A stretch of 64,000 nt of DNA from IMG/VR virus record IMGVR_UViG_3300030098_004828, positions 1-64,000 of that record; one strand, written 5' to 3'. A program made the position numbers and the translations under genes. The notes under the pieces were generated by a model. That model was not told the DNA's origin. It ran no database searches and was given only the letters and a program-made list of their open reading frames with translations. This document shows positions 9,435 through 14,009 of this stretch, piece after piece (position 1 is the first letter of the stretch; each line of letters opens with the position of its first letter).

Positions 9435-10040
9435 TTATAATTCAAAAGTTTCTTCTTCCATTACTATTTCTTCTTGTGGAGCATTCTCCCCTTCTTCTTT
9501 ATCTTTCTTCTTACTTTTAGGCTTAGCTTTAGCTTCAGGATCTTCTGTAGTATTATCTATCATTTCTTGCATTTCTGCTTGAGTTAGATTTCCTTTCTTT
9601 TCAGTTTCCTCAGAAGCATTAGCTTCTCTAATAGCATCACCATTAGTATGAGCAATAAACTCATCTTCTAATGTACCTGATGCATCATAGAATGCCTTTC
9701 TATAAATAGGTTCTCCATGTCTACAACAAACTATTCCTGTTTCACCTGCTATTTTAAGATCTCTATCTGGATCATTAGCATCAAAAGCTTCTGTTTGTTC
9801 TTTTATAATGATATTACCTGGTAATGGTTGATCAGCAGTTAGACCTATCTCTTGTAAGTCTTCTACTAAACCATGGATTAATGTACTTAAGTTTGATCTT
9901 TTGACCCAACCTGTTGCACTGAATCCAACTCTTGTTTGTGTTAGTCTAACATGACCGTATTCTGGATTGTTTTTTGATACTCTAATTACATTTCCTTGTT
10001 CGTCAGGACTAATCCTAACATTGCTGTTTTTGTTTTCCAT
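9435..10040 (-). CDS. Possible second ssDNA-binding (OB-fold-like) protein
   Basis: Beta-rich N-terminal domain, long charged disordered tail ending EEETFEL. Confidence 0.4.
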   Translation of the reverse strand: MENKNSNVRISPDEQGNVIRVSKNNPEYGHVRLTQTRVGFSATGWVKRSNLSTLIHGLVEDLQEIGLTADQPLPGNIIIKEQTEAFDANDPDRDLKIAGETGIVCCRHGEPIYRKAFYDASGTLEDEFIAHTNGDAIREANASEETEKKGNLTQAEMQEMIDNTTEDPEAKAKPKSKKKDKEEGENAPQEEIVMEEETFEL

Positions 10041-10071
10041 TTTTAAAAAATTAATTGATTAATATTATTGA

Positions 10072-10344
10072 TTACACATCATCTCTATGGAAGTAATTAT
10101 CTTCCATTTTTTCTATATCCTTGATTTCATCAAGATTTGGTTCTCTTTCAGGAATATTCCATGTATCAGGATCTTCCTTCTGTTTTTTATTTGTATGAAC
10201 TACAGATTTATAAAAAGGATTGCTAATATCTGATGTAAATTCTTTACCAAGACCATTGAGCTCTCTAAAATCTTGATCATCTAATTCAAGATATTGTTCT
10301 AGAGACATCTCTATTATTCTGCCGTTTGGTAATTGATAAATCAT
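10072..10344 (-). CDS. Acidic hypothetical protein
   Basis: MIYQLPNGRIIEMSLEQYL; ATG lies 3 nt after a TACATTTG element (possibly leaderless). Confidence 0.65.
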   Translation of the reverse strand: MIYQLPNGRIIEMSLEQYLELDDQDFRELNGLGKEFTSDISNPFYKSVVHTNKKQKEDPDTWNIPEREPNLDEIKDIEKMEDNYFHRDDV

Positions 10345-10420
10345 ACGCAAATGTATACTATTTTATTTACTTTACATAGTCAAAAAACTTGACCACTTAA
10401 CAAATAAATGAGTAGTATAG

Positions 10421-10663
10421 CTATCTTGCAACAAATATTTTTCTTCCTTTTCTATCTATATGTCCTTTTTTCTTTAATTCTTCTAACTTTCTTTGAATTG
10501 TTCTTGGATGTACATCACAAACATCCGCTAACGTGCTAATTAAAGGATAACACCATCCATTTTTATCAGCATAAGTACATACTAAAGCGTATACACCTTT
10601 TGCTGTTAGTGATATTTCTGGATCTGTTAATACATCTTTGTTAACTATTCCAAACCTTTCCAT
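10421..10663 (-). CDS. Winged-helix DNA-binding protein (HTH_36-like)
   Basis: ISLTAKGVYALV...CYPLISTLADVCDVHPRTIQRKLEELKKKGHI. Confidence 0.8.
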   Translation of the reverse strand: MERFGIVNKDVLTDPEISLTAKGVYALVCTYADKNGWCYPLISTLADVCDVHPRTIQRKLEELKKKGHIDRKGRKIFVAR

Positions 10664-11076
10664 AATTTTATAATGTTAGATCTTTTTACTCTCAGTTCTT
10701 TAGATGGTTTTGTTTTACTATTTTCTACAGCATGAAAATCTACTGTTAATTTATATTCAGTTGAATAAGGACTACAACTATCTCTATAACTAGCATCATT
10801 TATAATAGTACCTTTAATATATCCTTCATCACACATTTTTAATGCATCTTTCATTAAATCATCTTCATACACATCAGTTAGATCATACTTATTATCTTTA
10901 GGATCAAACCATACTATATCTCCTTTCTTAAAGTATATGTGTTCTTTTTCATTTACTATTTCATCCATTATTGTACCTTTTTGTTCATCAGTGAGATATG
11001 ATATCATCATTGCTACTATGAACTCATCTGTTAGTGAATCTTTTATTACCTTTTGTGTTATTTTATTTATATTCAT
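10645..11076 (-). CDS. Hypothetical protein (SH3-like barrel possible)
   Basis: FKKGDIVWF...GTII pattern. Confidence 0.6.
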   Translation of the reverse strand: MNINKITQKVIKDSLTDEFIVAMMISYLTDEQKGTIMDEIVNEKEHIYFKKGDIVWFDPKDNKYDLTDVYEDDLMKDALKMCDEGYIKGTIINDASYRDSCSPYSTEYKLTVDFHAVENSKTKPSKELRVKRSNIIKLWKGLE

Positions 11077-11915: not shown

Positions 11916-12308
11916 TTAATTGATTCTTTTCCATGTATCACATTCAGATTCATCAACTACTTTGATTTCACTTGCAGGAATAATAAAAGAAAAATCTTTA
12001 TTCATCTCAACCAAATAATTATTAACTAAATCATTTATCATATCTTCAGACATACTAACAGGACCACCATCAGGTAAGATACCTTTATCAAAATCCCATA
12101 CTTCATATCCTAATGTTTCATACAAACCAGTCCAATCTCTTCCTCCCATTCTTTCTTTCATCTCTGCTTTCTTCTTATCAGTTGATCTAACAATTGATAA
12201 TGATAAACCATTTCTAAATGGTATTAATGTCTGTATTGTACCAACATAAGAGTCTTCAAATGTTTTAACGATGCCACAATCTATGGCTAAGTCTAAATAA
12301 AATTTCAT
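11916..12308 (-). CDS. Hypothetical protein
   Basis: 130-aa ORF; FRNGLSLSIVR...GLYE pattern seen in small phage proteins. Confidence 0.65.
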   Translation of the reverse strand: MKFYLDLAIDCGIVKTFEDSYVGTIQTLIPFRNGLSLSIVRSTDKKKAEMKERMGGRDWTGLYETLGYEVWDFDKGILPDGGPVSMSEDMINDLVNNYLVEMNKDFSFIIPASEIKVVDESECDTWKRIN

Positions 12309-12344
12309 AAGTTCTGTTTTAAGTGATTAATATTAATTGATTTG

Positions 12345-13112
12345 AACAGTTTACTCTGTTGTTTCTCTATGGCTGAGTGAGTGACCATTTCCGCTAACAT
12401 TATATGACATGTCTGTCATATTACACACACTATGTATTCCTACATAGTAGCAAGCATTACCGCATTTTATCCTGTGCTGGCAGTTGTTCATCCTACAGTC
12501 CATAGAATCAATGATTACATCACGAGTTGTAAACTCTTCAGAGAAGTACCTTCCCCTATCTAAGTACAATAGTAAACTATTATACCACGCCTTGTGCCCA
12601 AGGTAGATAACCATATCATCTCAACTATAGCCTTGCGAGCTATAACTGTTCCCATATTACAGGGAAATAAGGTAATTGTCCTTATAAGATGTCCAATGAC
12701 TTTTACTTTTCTATTAATAATTGATTATGTCACGTAAGTGTGACTAACTATATTAACTAACCTAGATCCAAGCAGTGCATCAGAAATGTAACCATCATCC
12801 CTTTCAGGACAACGCACTACAACTGCTCAGTGTAAATATGTCTATTTACGTTACTTCACGATGCTGTAACCACATCATTTGTAATGAATACAACAGTAAC
12901 TCTATACCTAGAGTGTCCATCATATTCTAATAGTTTACCTGTTGTGCTTTCACACTCAATACCAACGGCTATTGGTATCACAACTCATCCATAAGGACAT
13001 TGTTGTGGTTACTACCTTGCATACATGGATTGCTAATGCAACGCTACTAAGGTGCTAACCTGTTCACTTTATTCCTATTACTAGGCTTATCCTATTGACT
13101 ATATGCAGCCAA
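12345..13112 (-). ncRNA. Large structured noncoding RNA (GOLLD/ROOL size class; family unassigned)
   Basis: At least 15 hairpins in ~750 nt, many with GNNA tetraloops on the minus strand; G-U pairs work only on minus; long-range helices; higher GC than flanks. Confidence 0.7.
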
Positions 13113-13130
13113 AATACTACCGAAGTAGTA
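13111..13130 (-). terminator. cUUCGg hairpin plus U4 (weak terminator or processing signal)
   Basis: TACTAC-TTCG-GTAGTA-TTTT immediately 3' of the tRNA-like RNA. Confidence 0.6.
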
Positions 13131-13135
13131 CATAG

Positions 13136-13213
13136 TGGAGATGCTCAGAATTGAACTGAGATACTACATAGTACCACAAGTGGTCTTCTATGCAGGCAAA
13201 ACCTTTCATCCCC
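13136..13213 (-). ncRNA. tmRNA tRNA-like-domain-only RNA (alanine-acceptor mimic), 78 nt
   Basis: GGGGATG/CATCTCC-A acceptor with G3-U70 and A73; AAAGGTTTTGC D-loop; helix CTGCATAG/CTATGTAG capped by ACCAC-TT-GTGGT; T-arm CTCAG-TTCAATT-CTGAG; no anticodon loop or tag ORF. Confidence 0.8.
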
Positions 13214-13370
13214 ATTTTATTTGCCTCCGTTACTATAATTCTACTATAGAGAGAGAACAAACTAATTAACTCTAATCATTCCAACCATATGGATGTGTAT
13301 GTGTAACAATACTAATGATTATAGCTATATCTTATTTTAATGCTGTTGAGTTCAGCTGATTACTATTAAG

Positions 13371-13398
13371 GTGGTAAAAAGTGGTGTTTTGTGGTAAT
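13371..13398. repeat. Three GTGGT units at exact 10-bp spacing
   Basis: gtggtaaaaa gtggtgtttt gtggtaat at 13371, 13381, 13391. Confidence 0.7.
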
Positions 13399-13514
13399 CA
13401 TACACATTCACACGCACATAAGAAAAGAATTAAACACTAAACAAAGCATAATGTGCATATACAACTGATATCATCAGGATATGGAGTGATCATGCTCTAT
13501 TTAAGTGAGTATTG

Positions 13515-13560
13515 TAAGTCTATTAAGTCTATTCAGTCTACAGTAAGTCTATTCAGTCCT
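13515..13560. repeat. Tandem 9-bp repeats T(A/C)AGTCTA(T/C), about five copies
   Basis: taagtctat taagtctat tcagtctac ag taagtctat tcagtcct. Confidence 0.8.
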
Positions 13561-13567
13561 CTTTAAT

Positions 13568-13593
13568 GGAAGGAGAGGATTGCTCCTCTCTTC
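13568..13593 (-). terminator. GCAA-tetraloop hairpin after 13605..14009
   Basis: GGAAGAGAGGA-GCAA-TCCTCTCCTTCC. Confidence 0.6.
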
Positions 13594-13604
13594 CACCCCA
13601 AGAA

Positions 13605-14009
13605 TTACTTCTTGGCTGCAGCCTTAGGCTTGTCCTCAGGCTCAGATGCTGCATCAGTCTCTTGCGAAGCAAGATACTTATCAGCATAGCCAGGTATTGG
13701 TTCAACCCAATACATGCCAGACTCTACGTCTGTAGGATTACCATCTTCATCCAGTTCCATTATTGGTACTGATGAGAATCTCCACCCAGGCATTTCCTGG
13801 TCCTGTTCAAGACCCAGTTCGTGGATGTCAACTCCTGTTGGCAAATCAACTGCAGCTATAAGACCCCAAGTAGTATCTTTAGATGCTTCTTGGTTTCTTG
13901 CCTCTACCACTACACCATTTATAATGGCTTTAGTTGTAGACAGCTTCTTAGATTTGACAATAAGAGCATCGCTCTTGTCACTCTGTTCATGGAAAATTAC
14001 TTTTTTCAT
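13605..14009 (-). CDS. Acidic hypothetical protein, first gene of leftward arm
   Basis: 134 aa, A-rich leader, followed by its own hairpin; more GC-rich than neighbours. Confidence 0.75.
   Translation of the reverse strand: MKKVIFHEQSDKSDALIVKSKKLSTTKAIINGVVVEARNQEASKDTTWGLIAAVDLPTGVDIHELGLEQDQEMPGWRFSSVPIMELDEDGNPTDVESGMYWVEPIPGYADKYLASQETDAASEPEDKPKAAAKK

What the first reader, a model, noticed from the sequence alone, without database searches (positions are those of the whole stretch)
12345..13112. ~740-nt ornate noncoding RNA directly downstream of the mini-tmRNA
Seen (minus strand, plus coordinates): CCTA-GTAA-TAGG 13074-85; ATACCAAT-AGCC-GTTGGTAT 12959-78; GTGT-GAAA-GCAC 12944-55; ACTCTA-GGTA-TAGAGT 12899-914; GTAAATA-GACA-TATTTAC 12832-49; GTCCT-GAAA-GGGAT 12797-810; TATAGCTC-GCAA-GGCTATA ~12626-44; CCTTG-GGCA-CAAGG 12590-603; GTATAATAG-TTTA-CTATTGTAC 12564-85; ACTATGTA-GGAA-TACATAGT 12429-48; TATGACA-GACA-TGTCATA 12403-20. 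There is a long-range GTAACCACA/TGTGGTTAC pair (~13004-12 with ~12866-74) and a possible end-closing TGGCTG/CAGCCA pair (13106-11 with 12370-75). G-U pairs and GNNA loops all point to the minus strand. Established: giant phage-associated RNAs (GOLLD, ROOL) are this size and often lie beside tRNA genes. Inference: a GOLLD-like or new giant RNA co-transcribed with the tRNA mimic as an RNA-only early module. An AT-rich gap at ~12700-12760 could split it into two RNAs.
Basis: partly seen in the sequence, partly recalled or inferred. Interest (0 to 1): 0.85.

Follow-up and report, generated by a model that had tools for sequence, protein, structure and literature searches.

The report
Divergent GOLLD RNA in marine phage
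The stretch is a real, roughly 740-760-nucleotide structured non-coding RNA on the minus strand, but it is a divergent member of the already known GOLLD family of phage 'nanocage' RNAs rather than a new kind of RNA.

Summary
All eleven hairpins are at the stated coordinates. The minus strand folds far better than shuffles (z -5.4; plus strand -2.3). Seventeen homologues from phage and metagenome contigs show strong compensatory covariation. The 87-codon ORF is not conserved.

The RNA is a GOLLD RNA (Rfam RF02032). The 3' half (12828..12370) matches the full 416-position model at 65 bits, and it is the only Rfam hit in the whole window (E 1.4e-14). That is below Rfam's gathering score of 150, so a default scan reports nothing. 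Relatives bridge the gap, scoring 50 to 151 bits. A model built only from the subfamily's 5' halves finds the 5' domains of Rfam-certified GOLLDs (E about 1e-15).

The 'AT-rich gap' is GOLLD's variable internal linker, not a boundary between two RNAs. The proposed end-closing pair is not supported by covariation. The long-range pair conflicts with two better-supported local helices.

The host is a marine phage distantly related to crAss-like phages. The RNA sits in a conserved slot, bracketed by a shared leader motif and a shared 3' hairpin, just after a tRNA-like element. By homology it most likely forms an RNA-only multimeric cage. Its function is unknown. It is a new member of a known kind.

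The parts
13244..13257 (-). Conserved leader motif TTCTCTCTCTATAG upstream of the RNA unit. It is a candidate promoter or leader. This is inferred, not shown.
   Evidence: The exact motif is also present in relatives L011, L015, L029, L037 and L214. The leaders of the window and L037 align at 72% identity.
It has an acceptor stem GGGGAUG/CAUCUCC with G3:U70 and A73, and a T arm CUCAG-UUCAAUU-CUGAG. It has no D arm and carries a closed long hairpin in place of the anticodon arm. It is a neighbour of GOLLD, not part of it.
   Evidence: Fold z -3.6. It is not called by ARAGORN or by the Rfam tRNA/tmRNA models at E<=10. Nearly identical copies occur in L011 and L228.
13115..13130 (-). Small hairpin UACUAC-UUCG-GUAGUA just before the first GOLLD helix. 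It is probably the 5'-most element of the RNA.
   Evidence: Almost every subfamily member inspected has a hairpin of unrelated sequence at this position.
12831..13110 (-). GOLLD 5' domain. It contains P1 GGCU/AGUC, CCUA-GUAA-UAGG, UUGC-AUUA-GCAA, CACAAC/GUUGUG, AUACCAAU-AGCC-GUUGGUAU, the invariant GUGU-GAAA-GCAC, ACUCUA-GGUA-UAGAGU, AUGAUGU/GCAUCGU and GUAAAUA-GACA-UAUUUAC.
   Evidence: Covariance model R1 was built from its first 175 nt in 17 subfamily members. It hits Rfam-certified GOLLD loci L003 and L004 (74 and 73 bits, E about 1e-15) and L005 (E 7e-5), each just upstream of that locus's Rfam 3'-domain match. On that alignment 95.8% of cells are paired, 25 of 27 pairs are compensatory and 0 of 500 shuffles reach the observed values.
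12370..12828 (-). GOLLD 3' domain, matching Rfam RF02032 over model positions 1-416.
   Evidence: 65 bits. E 3.3e-16 in the local search and 1.4e-14 for the whole window, where it is the only hit.
12768..12830 (-). First 3'-domain hairpin: outer stem CUGAGCAGU/ACUGCUUGG, apical GUCCU-GAAA-GGGAU.
   Evidence: The outer stem is 91% paired with 8 of 9 pairs compensatory. It matches Rfam model positions 1-64.
12711..12767 (-).
   Evidence: It is hypervariable in length across the 17 homologues. It aligns to the unpaired linker of the Rfam model. In canonical GOLLD L001 a tRNA gene sits inside this linker. The linker is disordered and faces the cage interior in the cryo-EM structure (PMC12286853).
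12698..12710 (-). Conserved motif AAAAGUAAAAGUC (family consensus AAAAGCAAAAGUC).
   Evidence: Aligned to Rfam consensus positions about 118-130 and conserved in the subfamily.
12671..12676 (-). 5' strand (AUUACC) of a long-range pseudoknot helix. It pairs with GGUAAU at 12461-12456.
   Evidence: 100% of cells are paired across 17 sequences and 4 of 6 pairs show compensatory changes.
12456..12461 (-). 3' strand (GGUAAU) of the long-range pseudoknot helix.
12649..12666 (-). Hairpin UUCCC-UGUAAUAU-GGGAA with a nearly invariant loop.
   Evidence: 98% paired with 5 of 5 pairs compensatory.
12626..12644 (-). Hairpin carrying the family motif GCUCGCAAGGC.
   Evidence: Matches the Rfam consensus. Compensatory changes are seen despite MAFFT misalignment.
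12557..12609 (-). Three-way element equivalent to P21 of the published structure. The stem UAUCUA/UAGAUA encloses CCUUG-GGCA-CAAGG (P21a-like; the loop keeps a self-complementary GC) and GUAUAAUAG-UUUA-CUAUUGUAC (P21b-like; longer stem, different loop).
   Evidence: Folds of this segment in ten members show the same architecture. cmscan pushed it into an insertion. The role of the P21a and P21b loops as self-kissing bridges comes from PMC12286853.
12516..12556 (-). Clade-specific insertion of two small hairpins, GGAAG-GUA-CUUCU and GAGUU-UAC-AACUC.
   Evidence: Present only in the window, L228, L214 and L248. It helps explain the low Rfam score.
12393..12455 (-). 3' three-way element. The closing helix GCUUGC/GUUAGC encloses ACUAUGUA-GGAA-UACAUAGU and UAUGACA-GACA-UGUCAUA. 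Both loops are GNRA tetraloops.
   Evidence: Closing helix: 96% paired, 6 of 6 pairs compensatory. Hairpins: 99% and 94% paired, 6 compensatory pairs each.
12371..12386 (-). Conserved 3' tail GGUCACUCACUCAGCC.
   Evidence: Nearly invariant in the subfamily. Matches the end of the Rfam model.
12345..12360 (-). Hairpin AACAG-AGUAAA-CUGUU after the RNA. It is a candidate terminator or 3' end of the unit. This is inferred.
   Evidence: The same motif closes the equivalent slot in L011, L015, L029, L037, L214 and L228.

Best explanation
Window 13110..12370 (minus strand; 13130..12370 with the preceding small hairpin) encodes a divergent GOLLD RNA. The carrier is an uncultivated marine phage whose terminase is distantly related to those of crAss-like phages.

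Shown here: the RNA has the two-domain GOLLD architecture. This comprises a 5' domain homologous to that of certified GOLLDs, a first 3'-domain hairpin, a variable AU-rich linker, and the conserved pseudoknotted 3' core. It belongs to a subfamily of about 20 aquatic phage and metagenome sequences, most of which score below Rfam's gathering cut-off.

Inferred from solved structures of two other GOLLDs: after transcription the RNA folds and self-assembles. Kissing loops and A-minor or tetraloop contacts would build a closed, dihedrally symmetric RNA-only cage of roughly 10-14 copies, with the linker facing inward. The extra hairpins of this clade could change the copy number.

Inferred from context: it is made from one RNA-only transcription unit together with the upstream tRNA-like element. 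It probably acts during infection in some tRNA- or translation-linked role. What the cage does is unknown for the whole family.
For: Rfam GOLLD is the only hit in the 64-kb window: full model length, 65 bits, E 1.4e-14.

Homologues score in a continuous series: 50, 63, 65, 73, 106, 116, 130, 131, 134, 136 and 151 bits. Canonical GOLLDs found by motif score 171-205 bits.

The 5'-domain model R1, built without canonical sequences, hits canonical GOLLDs L003, L004 and L005 at the expected position.

Covariation is strong: 65 of 89 pairs and 25 of 27 pairs.

The strand is set by 260 G.U against 19 A.C cells.

The ORF is not conserved.

The invariant GAAA loop matches the conserved L11a loop of the published structure. 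The P21a-like loop keeps a self-complementary GC, as in the published self-kissing bridge.

The phage context comes from TerL, portal and MCP family matches and from crAss-like best hits at about 25% identity. Synteny is conserved in L154, L068, L214, L228 and L248.

tRNA or tmRNA genes lie beside or inside other members.

Family knowledge comes from PMC12286853 and PMC12990946.
Against: The Rfam score is well below the curated gathering cut-off of 150 bits.

Some close or distant subfamily members (L228, L201, L246) were not reported by cmscan at E<=0.001.

No canonical tRNA gene lies in the 64-kb window.

The P21b-like loop (UUUA) differs from the family consensus, and there is a 40-nt clade-specific insertion. 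Cage formation and copy number therefore cannot be assumed.

No expression, processing or assembly data exist for this sequence.

The covariation structures were derived from, or fitted to, the same alignments they were counted on.
Confidence: 0.88

Rival explanations
1. A new class of giant ornate RNA unrelated to GOLLD, with the Rfam match being a chance or partial resemblance.
For: The score of 65 bits is far below the gathering cut-off of 150, and the default Rfam scan returns nothing.
Against: E is 1.4e-14 over the full model length. Homologues score continuously up to 151 bits. The 5' domain independently finds certified GOLLDs. The shared motifs AAAAGYAAAAGUC, GCUCGCAAGGC, the GAAA loop and the CUCAGCC tail are all present.
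Confidence: 0.02
2. Two separate RNAs divided at the AT-rich stretch 12700-12760: a 5' RNA and a GOLLD 3'-domain RNA.
For: The stretch is AU-rich, poorly conserved and variable in length. The 3' domain of another GOLLD can assemble on its own in vitro (PMC12990946).
Against: The stretch lies inside the Rfam model, after its first hairpin, so a cut there would split the 3' domain itself. The 5' and 3' domains are contiguous in all 17 homologues and in canonical GOLLDs. No promoter-like or credible terminator-like site falls in the gap on the minus strand. The only terminator-like hit (12814..12793) is the covarying apical hairpin of the 3' domain's first hairpin, upstream of the gap. The solved full-length GOLLDs are single chains with this linker.
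Confidence: 0.05
3. The region is protein-coding or a decayed gene (ORF 12351..12614, 87 aa).
For: An 87-codon ATG ORF exists on the minus strand.
Against: Relatives 96-97% identical in nucleotides (L228, L214) have at least 2 stops in every frame. Substitutions are spread evenly over codon positions (4/2/3, 6/2/3, 15/12/13). Indels are not multiples of three. Helices covary across the ORF.
Confidence: 0.01
4. A DNA-level element such as a replication origin or cruciform cluster, at the point where leftward and rightward gene modules diverge.
For: The gene-orientation and GC-skew switch lies nearby, at about 14000. Direct repeats lie at 13515-13560.
Against: Pairing is strand-specific: 260 G.U against 19 A.C cells, and alifold -81.6 against -26.7. 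The region is homologous to an RNA family with solved RNA structures. An origin could still lie in the separate repeat region upstream.
Confidence: 0.02

Closest known systems
GOLLD RNA (Rfam RF02032; solved examples env-38, PDB 9MEE, 14-mer; Streptococcus agalactiae, PDB 9L0R, 12-mer)
   Same: It shares the two-domain layout, with a 5' domain homologous to certified members. It shares the full-length 3' core, including the pseudoknot helices and the variable internal linker. It shares the motifs AAAAGYAAAAGUC, GCUCGCAAGGC, the GAAA loop and the CUCAGCC tail. Its size is about 740-760 nt, it is carried by a phage, and tRNA-type genes lie nearby.
   Different: It scores 65 bits against a gathering score of 150. 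It has a 40-nt insertion of two hairpins after the P21-like element. Its P21b-like stem is longer and carries a UUUA loop. No canonical tRNA array is present; instead a non-decoding tRNA-like element sits 5 nt upstream. The carrier is a marine phage distantly related to crAss-like phages. I found no paper linking GOLLD to such phages in the searchable library, which is not proof that none exists.
ROOL RNA (about 550-600 nt; phage and prophage; 6- to 8-mer cages)
   Same: It is a large ornate phage-associated RNA found near tRNA genes, and it forms RNA-only cages.
   Different: No ROOL match appears in sensitive Rfam scans of the window. Its sequence and secondary structure are unrelated.
tmRNA tRNA-like domain and other tRNA-like structures (for the upstream neighbour at 13213..13136)
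   Same: The neighbour has an acceptor stem with G3:U70 and A73 (the alanine identity pair of tRNA-Ala and tmRNA, by established knowledge), a canonical T arm and a reduced D region. Full tmRNA genes lie near GOLLD in L005, L201 and L213.
   Different: It has no tag reading frame, no pseudoknots and no encoded CCA end. It is not detected by ARAGORN or by the Rfam tRNA/tmRNA models. Charging with alanine is untested.

Membership tests
GOLLD RNA (RF02032) | Statistically significant, full-length match to the family covariance model (3' domain) | tested here: met
   Model positions 1-416 of 416, 65 bits, E 3.3e-16 in the local search and 1.4e-14 for the whole window. It is the only Rfam hit at E<=0.05.
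GOLLD RNA (RF02032) | Rfam gathering score of 150 bits. This is an operational curation cut-off, not a structural feature. | tested here: not met
   The window scores 65 bits (one search returns nothing). Homologues bridge the gap at 50, 63, 73, 106, 116, 130, 131, 134, 136 and 151 bits. The deficit comes from divergence and from a cmscan misalignment of the P21 region.
GOLLD RNA (RF02032) | Conserved 3'-core helices supported by covariation, including long-range pseudoknot pairing | tested here: met
   AUUACC/GGUAAU is 100% paired with 4 of 6 pairs compensatory. The closing helix has 6 of 6, the first hairpin 8 of 9, and UUCCC/GGGAA 5 of 5. The Rfam-annotated long-range helix CAUCUUAUA/UGUAGGAUG forms 9 pairs in the window (read from the sequence) but is only 61% paired in the MAFFT alignment.
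GOLLD RNA (RF02032) | Variable single-stranded linker between the first 3'-domain hairpin and the core | tested here: met
   12767..12711 is AU-rich and its length varies widely among 17 homologues. The equivalent linker of L001 holds a tRNA gene.
GOLLD RNA (RF02032) | 5' domain of the GOLLD type (less conserved; includes the conserved GAAA loop called L11a) | tested here: met
   Model R1 hits certified GOLLDs L003 and L004 (E about 1e-15) and L005 (E 7e-5) upstream of their 3' domains. GUGU-GAAA-GCAC here corresponds to GUAG-GAAA-CUAC in L003 and L004. The loop's identity with L11a is inferred from the paper's text, not from a residue-level alignment to env-38.
GOLLD RNA (RF02032) | Carried by a phage or prophage, usually next to tRNA genes | tested here: inconclusive
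   The phage context is met. No canonical tRNA lies in the 64 kb; only a tRNA-like element sits 5 nt upstream. Other subfamily members do have adjacent tRNA or tmRNA genes.
GOLLD RNA (RF02032) | Self-assembly into a closed homo-oligomeric RNA cage | not testable with these tools
   Only indirect evidence: the P21a-like loop GGCA keeps a self-complementary GC, and GNRA loops are present. The P21b-like loop differs.
GOLLD RNA (RF02032) | Expression during phage lytic growth | not testable with these tools
   No transcript data are available.
ROOL RNA | Match to the Rfam ROOL model | tested here: not met
   No hit at E<=10 in 12200-13700 or at E<=0.05 in the whole window.
tmRNA (for the upstream neighbour only) | tRNA-like domain plus tag reading frame and pseudoknots; detected by ARAGORN or Rfam RF00023 | tested here: not met
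   Neither tool calls it. Only the acceptor stem and T-arm mimic are present.

The most novel reading that the evidence does not exclude
This lineage of marine phages keeps a dedicated RNA-only expression slot. It is bounded by a conserved leader (TTCTCTCTCTATAG...) and a conserved 3' hairpin (AACAG-AGUAAA-CUGUU). Different structured RNAs are swapped in and out of it: a minimal tRNA-like RNA with the alanine identity pair, GOLLD, and at least two unclassified structured RNAs (about 700 nt in L011 and about 290 nt in L037). In the window the tRNA-like RNA and GOLLD would be made as one precursor, and the tRNA-like RNA could be a client or cargo of the GOLLD cage. If so, this would be a tractable natural pairing for testing what GOLLD cages do.
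Probability: 0.2. Interest if true: 0.65.

Novelty: new member of a known kind. Interest (0 to 1): 0.38.

Why it matters
GOLLD is among the largest bacterial or phage non-coding RNAs with no known function, and it was recently shown to build RNA-only cages.

This case shows that a sizeable aquatic subfamily escapes the standard Rfam cut-off. About 20 distinct sequences were found here. Of the 14 distinct members scanned, the window included, 13 score below 150 bits or are not reported. The family is therefore under-counted in phage annotation.

It places GOLLD in relatives of crAss-like phages. It also gives natural variants for relating secondary structure to cage stoichiometry: two extra hairpins and an altered P21b-like loop.

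The neighbouring tRNA-like element and the swappable slot offer a concrete genetic context for probing function. The RNA itself is not a new kind of element.

Tried and rejected
- The default Rfam scan of the window gave nothing. Only the E-value mode revealed GOLLD.
- blastn of the region against 50,697 GenBank phage records gave no match.
- Neighbouring-protein searches mostly returned the window's own contig, plus one relative without the RNA in the held stretch.
- Among 80 TerL relatives, only L068 carried the RNA.
- The 14-mer scan of viral contigs gave mostly chance hits and needed nhmmer filtering.
- The 18-mer scan of 185,579 reference genomes gave 13 chance hits, none matching the 5'-domain model, so there is no host clue.
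- mafft-qinsi is not installed, so structure-aware alignment was limited to one Infernal model.
- I did not hand a 966-character structure string to the count of structure pairs. I computed the same controls in a script instead.
- The original GOLLD paper (Weinberg 2009) is not held.
- A crude stop-codon-reassignment check was uninformative.
- The promoter and terminator consensus scans were no better than shuffles.

Full report
**What is there.** The window is the first 64 kb of IMG/VR contig IMGVR_UViG_3300030098_004828 (245,646 bp). An identical copy of the RNA lies on a Tara Oceans scaffold (L240). On the minus strand, an ORF-poor stretch lies between a 134-codon ORF (14009..13605) and a 130-codon ORF (12308..11916). 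The minus strand folds at -225.3 kcal/mol against -190.5 +/- 6.4 for dinucleotide shuffles (z -5.44). The plus strand gives z -2.26.

**Identity of the 3' half.** The default Rfam scan of the window returns nothing. In E-value mode the 3' half (12828..12370) matches GOLLD (RF02032) over all 416 model positions at 65 bits, with E 3.3e-16. In a scan of the whole window, both strands, against 4,227 families, it is the only hit (E 1.4e-14). The gathering score is 150 bits. GOLLD loci recovered by a family motif score 171-205 bits.

**Homologues.** One TerL relative (L068) carries a homologous RNA that scores 106 bits. An 18-mer in the 5' half, TTGAGTGTGAAAGCACAA, is invariant in this group. Scans of viral and metagenome contigs with it, filtered by nhmmer, gave about 20 distinct full or partial members. 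Their Rfam scores run continuously: 50, 63, 73, 106, 116, 130, 131, 134, 136 and 151 bits. The window's 65 bits falls inside this series. The window RNA is therefore linked by an unbroken chain to sequences that pass Rfam's own cut-off. Three members (L228, L201, L246) were not reported at E<=0.001, which shows how far the subfamily has drifted from the seed.

**Identity of the 5' half.** Rfam's model covers only the 3' domain. I built a covariance model (R1) from the first 175 nt of the 5' domain in the 17 subfamily sequences only. It hits the certified GOLLD loci L003 and L004 at 74 and 73 bits (E about 1e-15) and L005 at 28.5 bits (E 7e-5). Each hit lies just upstream of that locus's Rfam 3'-domain match. 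Direct reading shows compensated equivalents: P1 GGCU/AGUC here against GGGA/UCUC in L003 and L004, and GUGU-GAAA-GCAC here against GUAG-GAAA-CUAC there. The GAAA loop fits the description of the only conserved non-bridging loop, L11a, in the env-38 structure (PMC12286853).

**Covariation and strand.** RNAalifold on the 17-sequence alignment predicts 89 pairs, 65 with compensatory changes. My controls are as follows.
- 94.3% of cells are paired, against 73.1% in column shuffles.
- The covariation score is 0.674, against 0.266 +/- 0.012 (0 of 500 shuffles reach it).
- The score drops to 0.09-0.13 when partners are slid by 1-3 columns.

On the Infernal alignment of the 5' domain, 95.8% of cells are paired, 25 of 27 pairs are compensatory and 0 of 500 shuffles reach the observed values. 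These structures were derived from, or fitted to, the alignments they were counted on, so the slide and shuffle controls are the meaningful comparison. Consensus pairs contain 260 G.U cells against 19 A.C cells. The alifold energy is -81.6 on the minus strand against -26.7 on the plus strand. The transcript is therefore minus-strand RNA.

- Strongly supported hairpins: 13085-74, 12978-59, 12448-29 and 12420-03.
- 12955-44 is invariant.
- 12914-899, 12849-32 and 12644-26 show compensations despite MAFFT misalignment of their loops.
- 12603-590 and 12585-564 are the two hairpins enclosed by the stem UAUCUA/UAGAUA, equivalent to P21a and P21b. Other members have GAGGA-GGCA-UCCUC and GUC-CGCAA-GAC at the same place. 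cmscan pushed this element into an insertion, which lowers the score.
- The window, L228, L214 and L248 additionally carry a 40-nt insertion with two small hairpins (12556..12516).
- The end-closing pair UGGCUG/CAGCCA is not supported. Changes in the 3' strand (G to A or U) are not compensated.
- The GUAACCACA/UGUGGUUAC pair is 61% paired. It overlaps CACAAC/GUUGUG (91% paired, 5 of 6 compensatory) and AUGAUGU/GCAUCGU (88% paired, 5 of 7 compensatory). Its central five pairs are often maintained, so a tertiary or intermolecular contact cannot be excluded.
- The 'AT-rich gap' is the family's variable linker, which follows the first hairpin of the 3' domain. In L001 a tRNA gene sits inside it. 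In the solved structure the linker is disordered and points into the cage.
- The 87-codon ORF fails the conservation test.

**Context.** TerL, portal and major capsid protein match phage families. The best TerL matches among GenBank phages are crAss-like phages at about 25% identity, followed by Bacteroides, Flavobacterium and Cellulophaga phages. The carrier is therefore a distant marine relative of crAss-like phages. The host is unknown, and a reference-genome scan gave only chance hits. The RNA sits at the head of the leftward (replication) gene block, near the divergence from the rightward structural block. The same placement holds in L154, L068, L214, L228 and L248.

**The upstream tRNA-like element.** Five nucleotides upstream of the small pre-GOLLD hairpin lies a 78-nt tRNA-like element (13213..13136). 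It has a G3:U70 acceptor stem, A73 and a canonical T arm. It has no D arm and no anticodon loop. ARAGORN and Rfam do not call it.

**The slot.** A leader motif (13257..13244) and a 3' hairpin (12360..12345) are conserved in relatives. They bracket inserts of about 150 nt (L029), 170 nt (L015), 290 nt (L037), 900 nt (window), 950 nt (L214) and 1,200 nt (L011). This suggests one RNA-only transcription unit with swappable contents. That is inference; no expression data exist. The tRNA-like element occurs without GOLLD in L011, and GOLLD occurs without it in L214 and L248.

**Mechanism.** The identity is shown; the mechanism is inferred. Two GOLLDs have been solved as RNA-only cages: env-38 as a 14-mer, and S. 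agalactiae as a 12-mer (its 3' domain alone mainly as a 10-mer). Copy number tracks the presence of peripheral helices such as P11a-c and P21b (PMC12286853, PMC12990946). The window RNA keeps the core, the GAAA loop, two GNRA hairpins and a P21a-like loop with a self-complementary GC. It differs in the P21b-like loop and carries extra hairpins. I therefore expect a cage of uncertain stoichiometry (my estimate is about 0.6). Its biological role remains unknown, as for the whole family. tRNA, tmRNA or tRNA-like genes recur beside or inside GOLLDs, which points to a translation- or tRNA-linked role.

**Verdict.** This is a real giant RNA, correctly spotted, and correctly suspected to be GOLLD-like. 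It is a new, divergent member of a known family, not a new class. I found no paper in the searchable library that links GOLLD with crAss-like phages, but the library is incomplete.

Noticed in passing
window 13136..13213 (minus); L011:774-854 (minus); L228:2897-2962 (minus): A 78-nt tRNA-like element with a G3:U70 acceptor stem, A73 and T arm CUCAG-UUCAAUU-CUGAG. It has no D arm and carries a closed long hairpin instead of an anticodon arm. ARAGORN and the Rfam tRNA/tmRNA models do not see it. Its sequence is almost unchanged in a relative with 85% TerL identity.
   Followed up: partly
L011:40-775 (minus): In a close relative (TerL 85% identical) the tRNA-like element is followed by a different stretch of about 700 nt instead of GOLLD. 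It is ORF-poor (longest ORF 69 aa) and folds with z -3.4. It has no Rfam hit at E<=0.1 and no match to my GOLLD 5'-domain model. It ends at the same AACAG-AGUAAA-CUGUU hairpin. It may be an unclassified large RNA.
   Followed up: partly
window 13244..13257 and 12345..12360 (minus); L015:551-735, L029:2518-2680, L037:1580-1885, L214:840-1803: A conserved leader motif TTCTCTCTCTATAG and a conserved 3' hairpin bracket a slot whose content ranges from about 150 nt to about 1,200 nt among related phages. This looks like a swappable RNA-only cassette.
   Followed up: partly
L015:566-690 (minus): The slot of this relative holds a 125-nt tRNA-like RNA. It has a U1-A72/G3:U70 acceptor stem, a T arm AGAGG-UUCAAUU-CCUCU and a central arm of about 70 nt. 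The fold z is only -1.6 and ARAGORN does not call it.
   Followed up: partly
L037:1303-2244 (minus): A 942-nt ORF-free stretch with a very strong fold signal (z -9.3 on the minus strand, -6.8 on the plus strand). It contains the leader, a slot RNA of about 290 nt and the shared hairpin, and is followed by tRNA-Arg (1228-1302). It has no Rfam family.
   Followed up: partly
window 13515..13560 (minus): Two to three direct repeats of GACTGAATAGACTTA lie just after a strong hairpin (GGAAGAGAGGA-GCAA-UCCUCUCCUUCC, about 13590..13563) that follows the 134-codon ORF. They are near the GC-skew and gene-orientation switch. They could be regulatory or origin-related.
   Followed up: no
L001:2206-2276 within L001:1923-2362 (minus): A canonical GOLLD (203 bits) with a tRNA gene embedded in its linker, inside a dense tRNA array.
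   Followed up: no
L213:14-216; L213:6033-6537; L201:3908-4234; L005:3883-4286: A Hatchet ribozyme hit (55 bits, gathering score 51), and phage-borne tmRNA genes within a few kb of GOLLD in three loci.
   Followed up: no
window 9435..11076 (minus): The replication-initiator-like ORF (10663..10421, 80 aa) matches only the N-terminal part of much longer PHROG profiles. It is flanked by short ORFs in other frames. A crude test for stop-codon reassignment was uninformative.
   Followed up: partly
whole contig: The source contig is 245,646 bp, whereas related contigs with the same TerL are 95-125 kb. The contig may be a concatemer or a misassembly rather than a jumbo genome.
   Followed up: no
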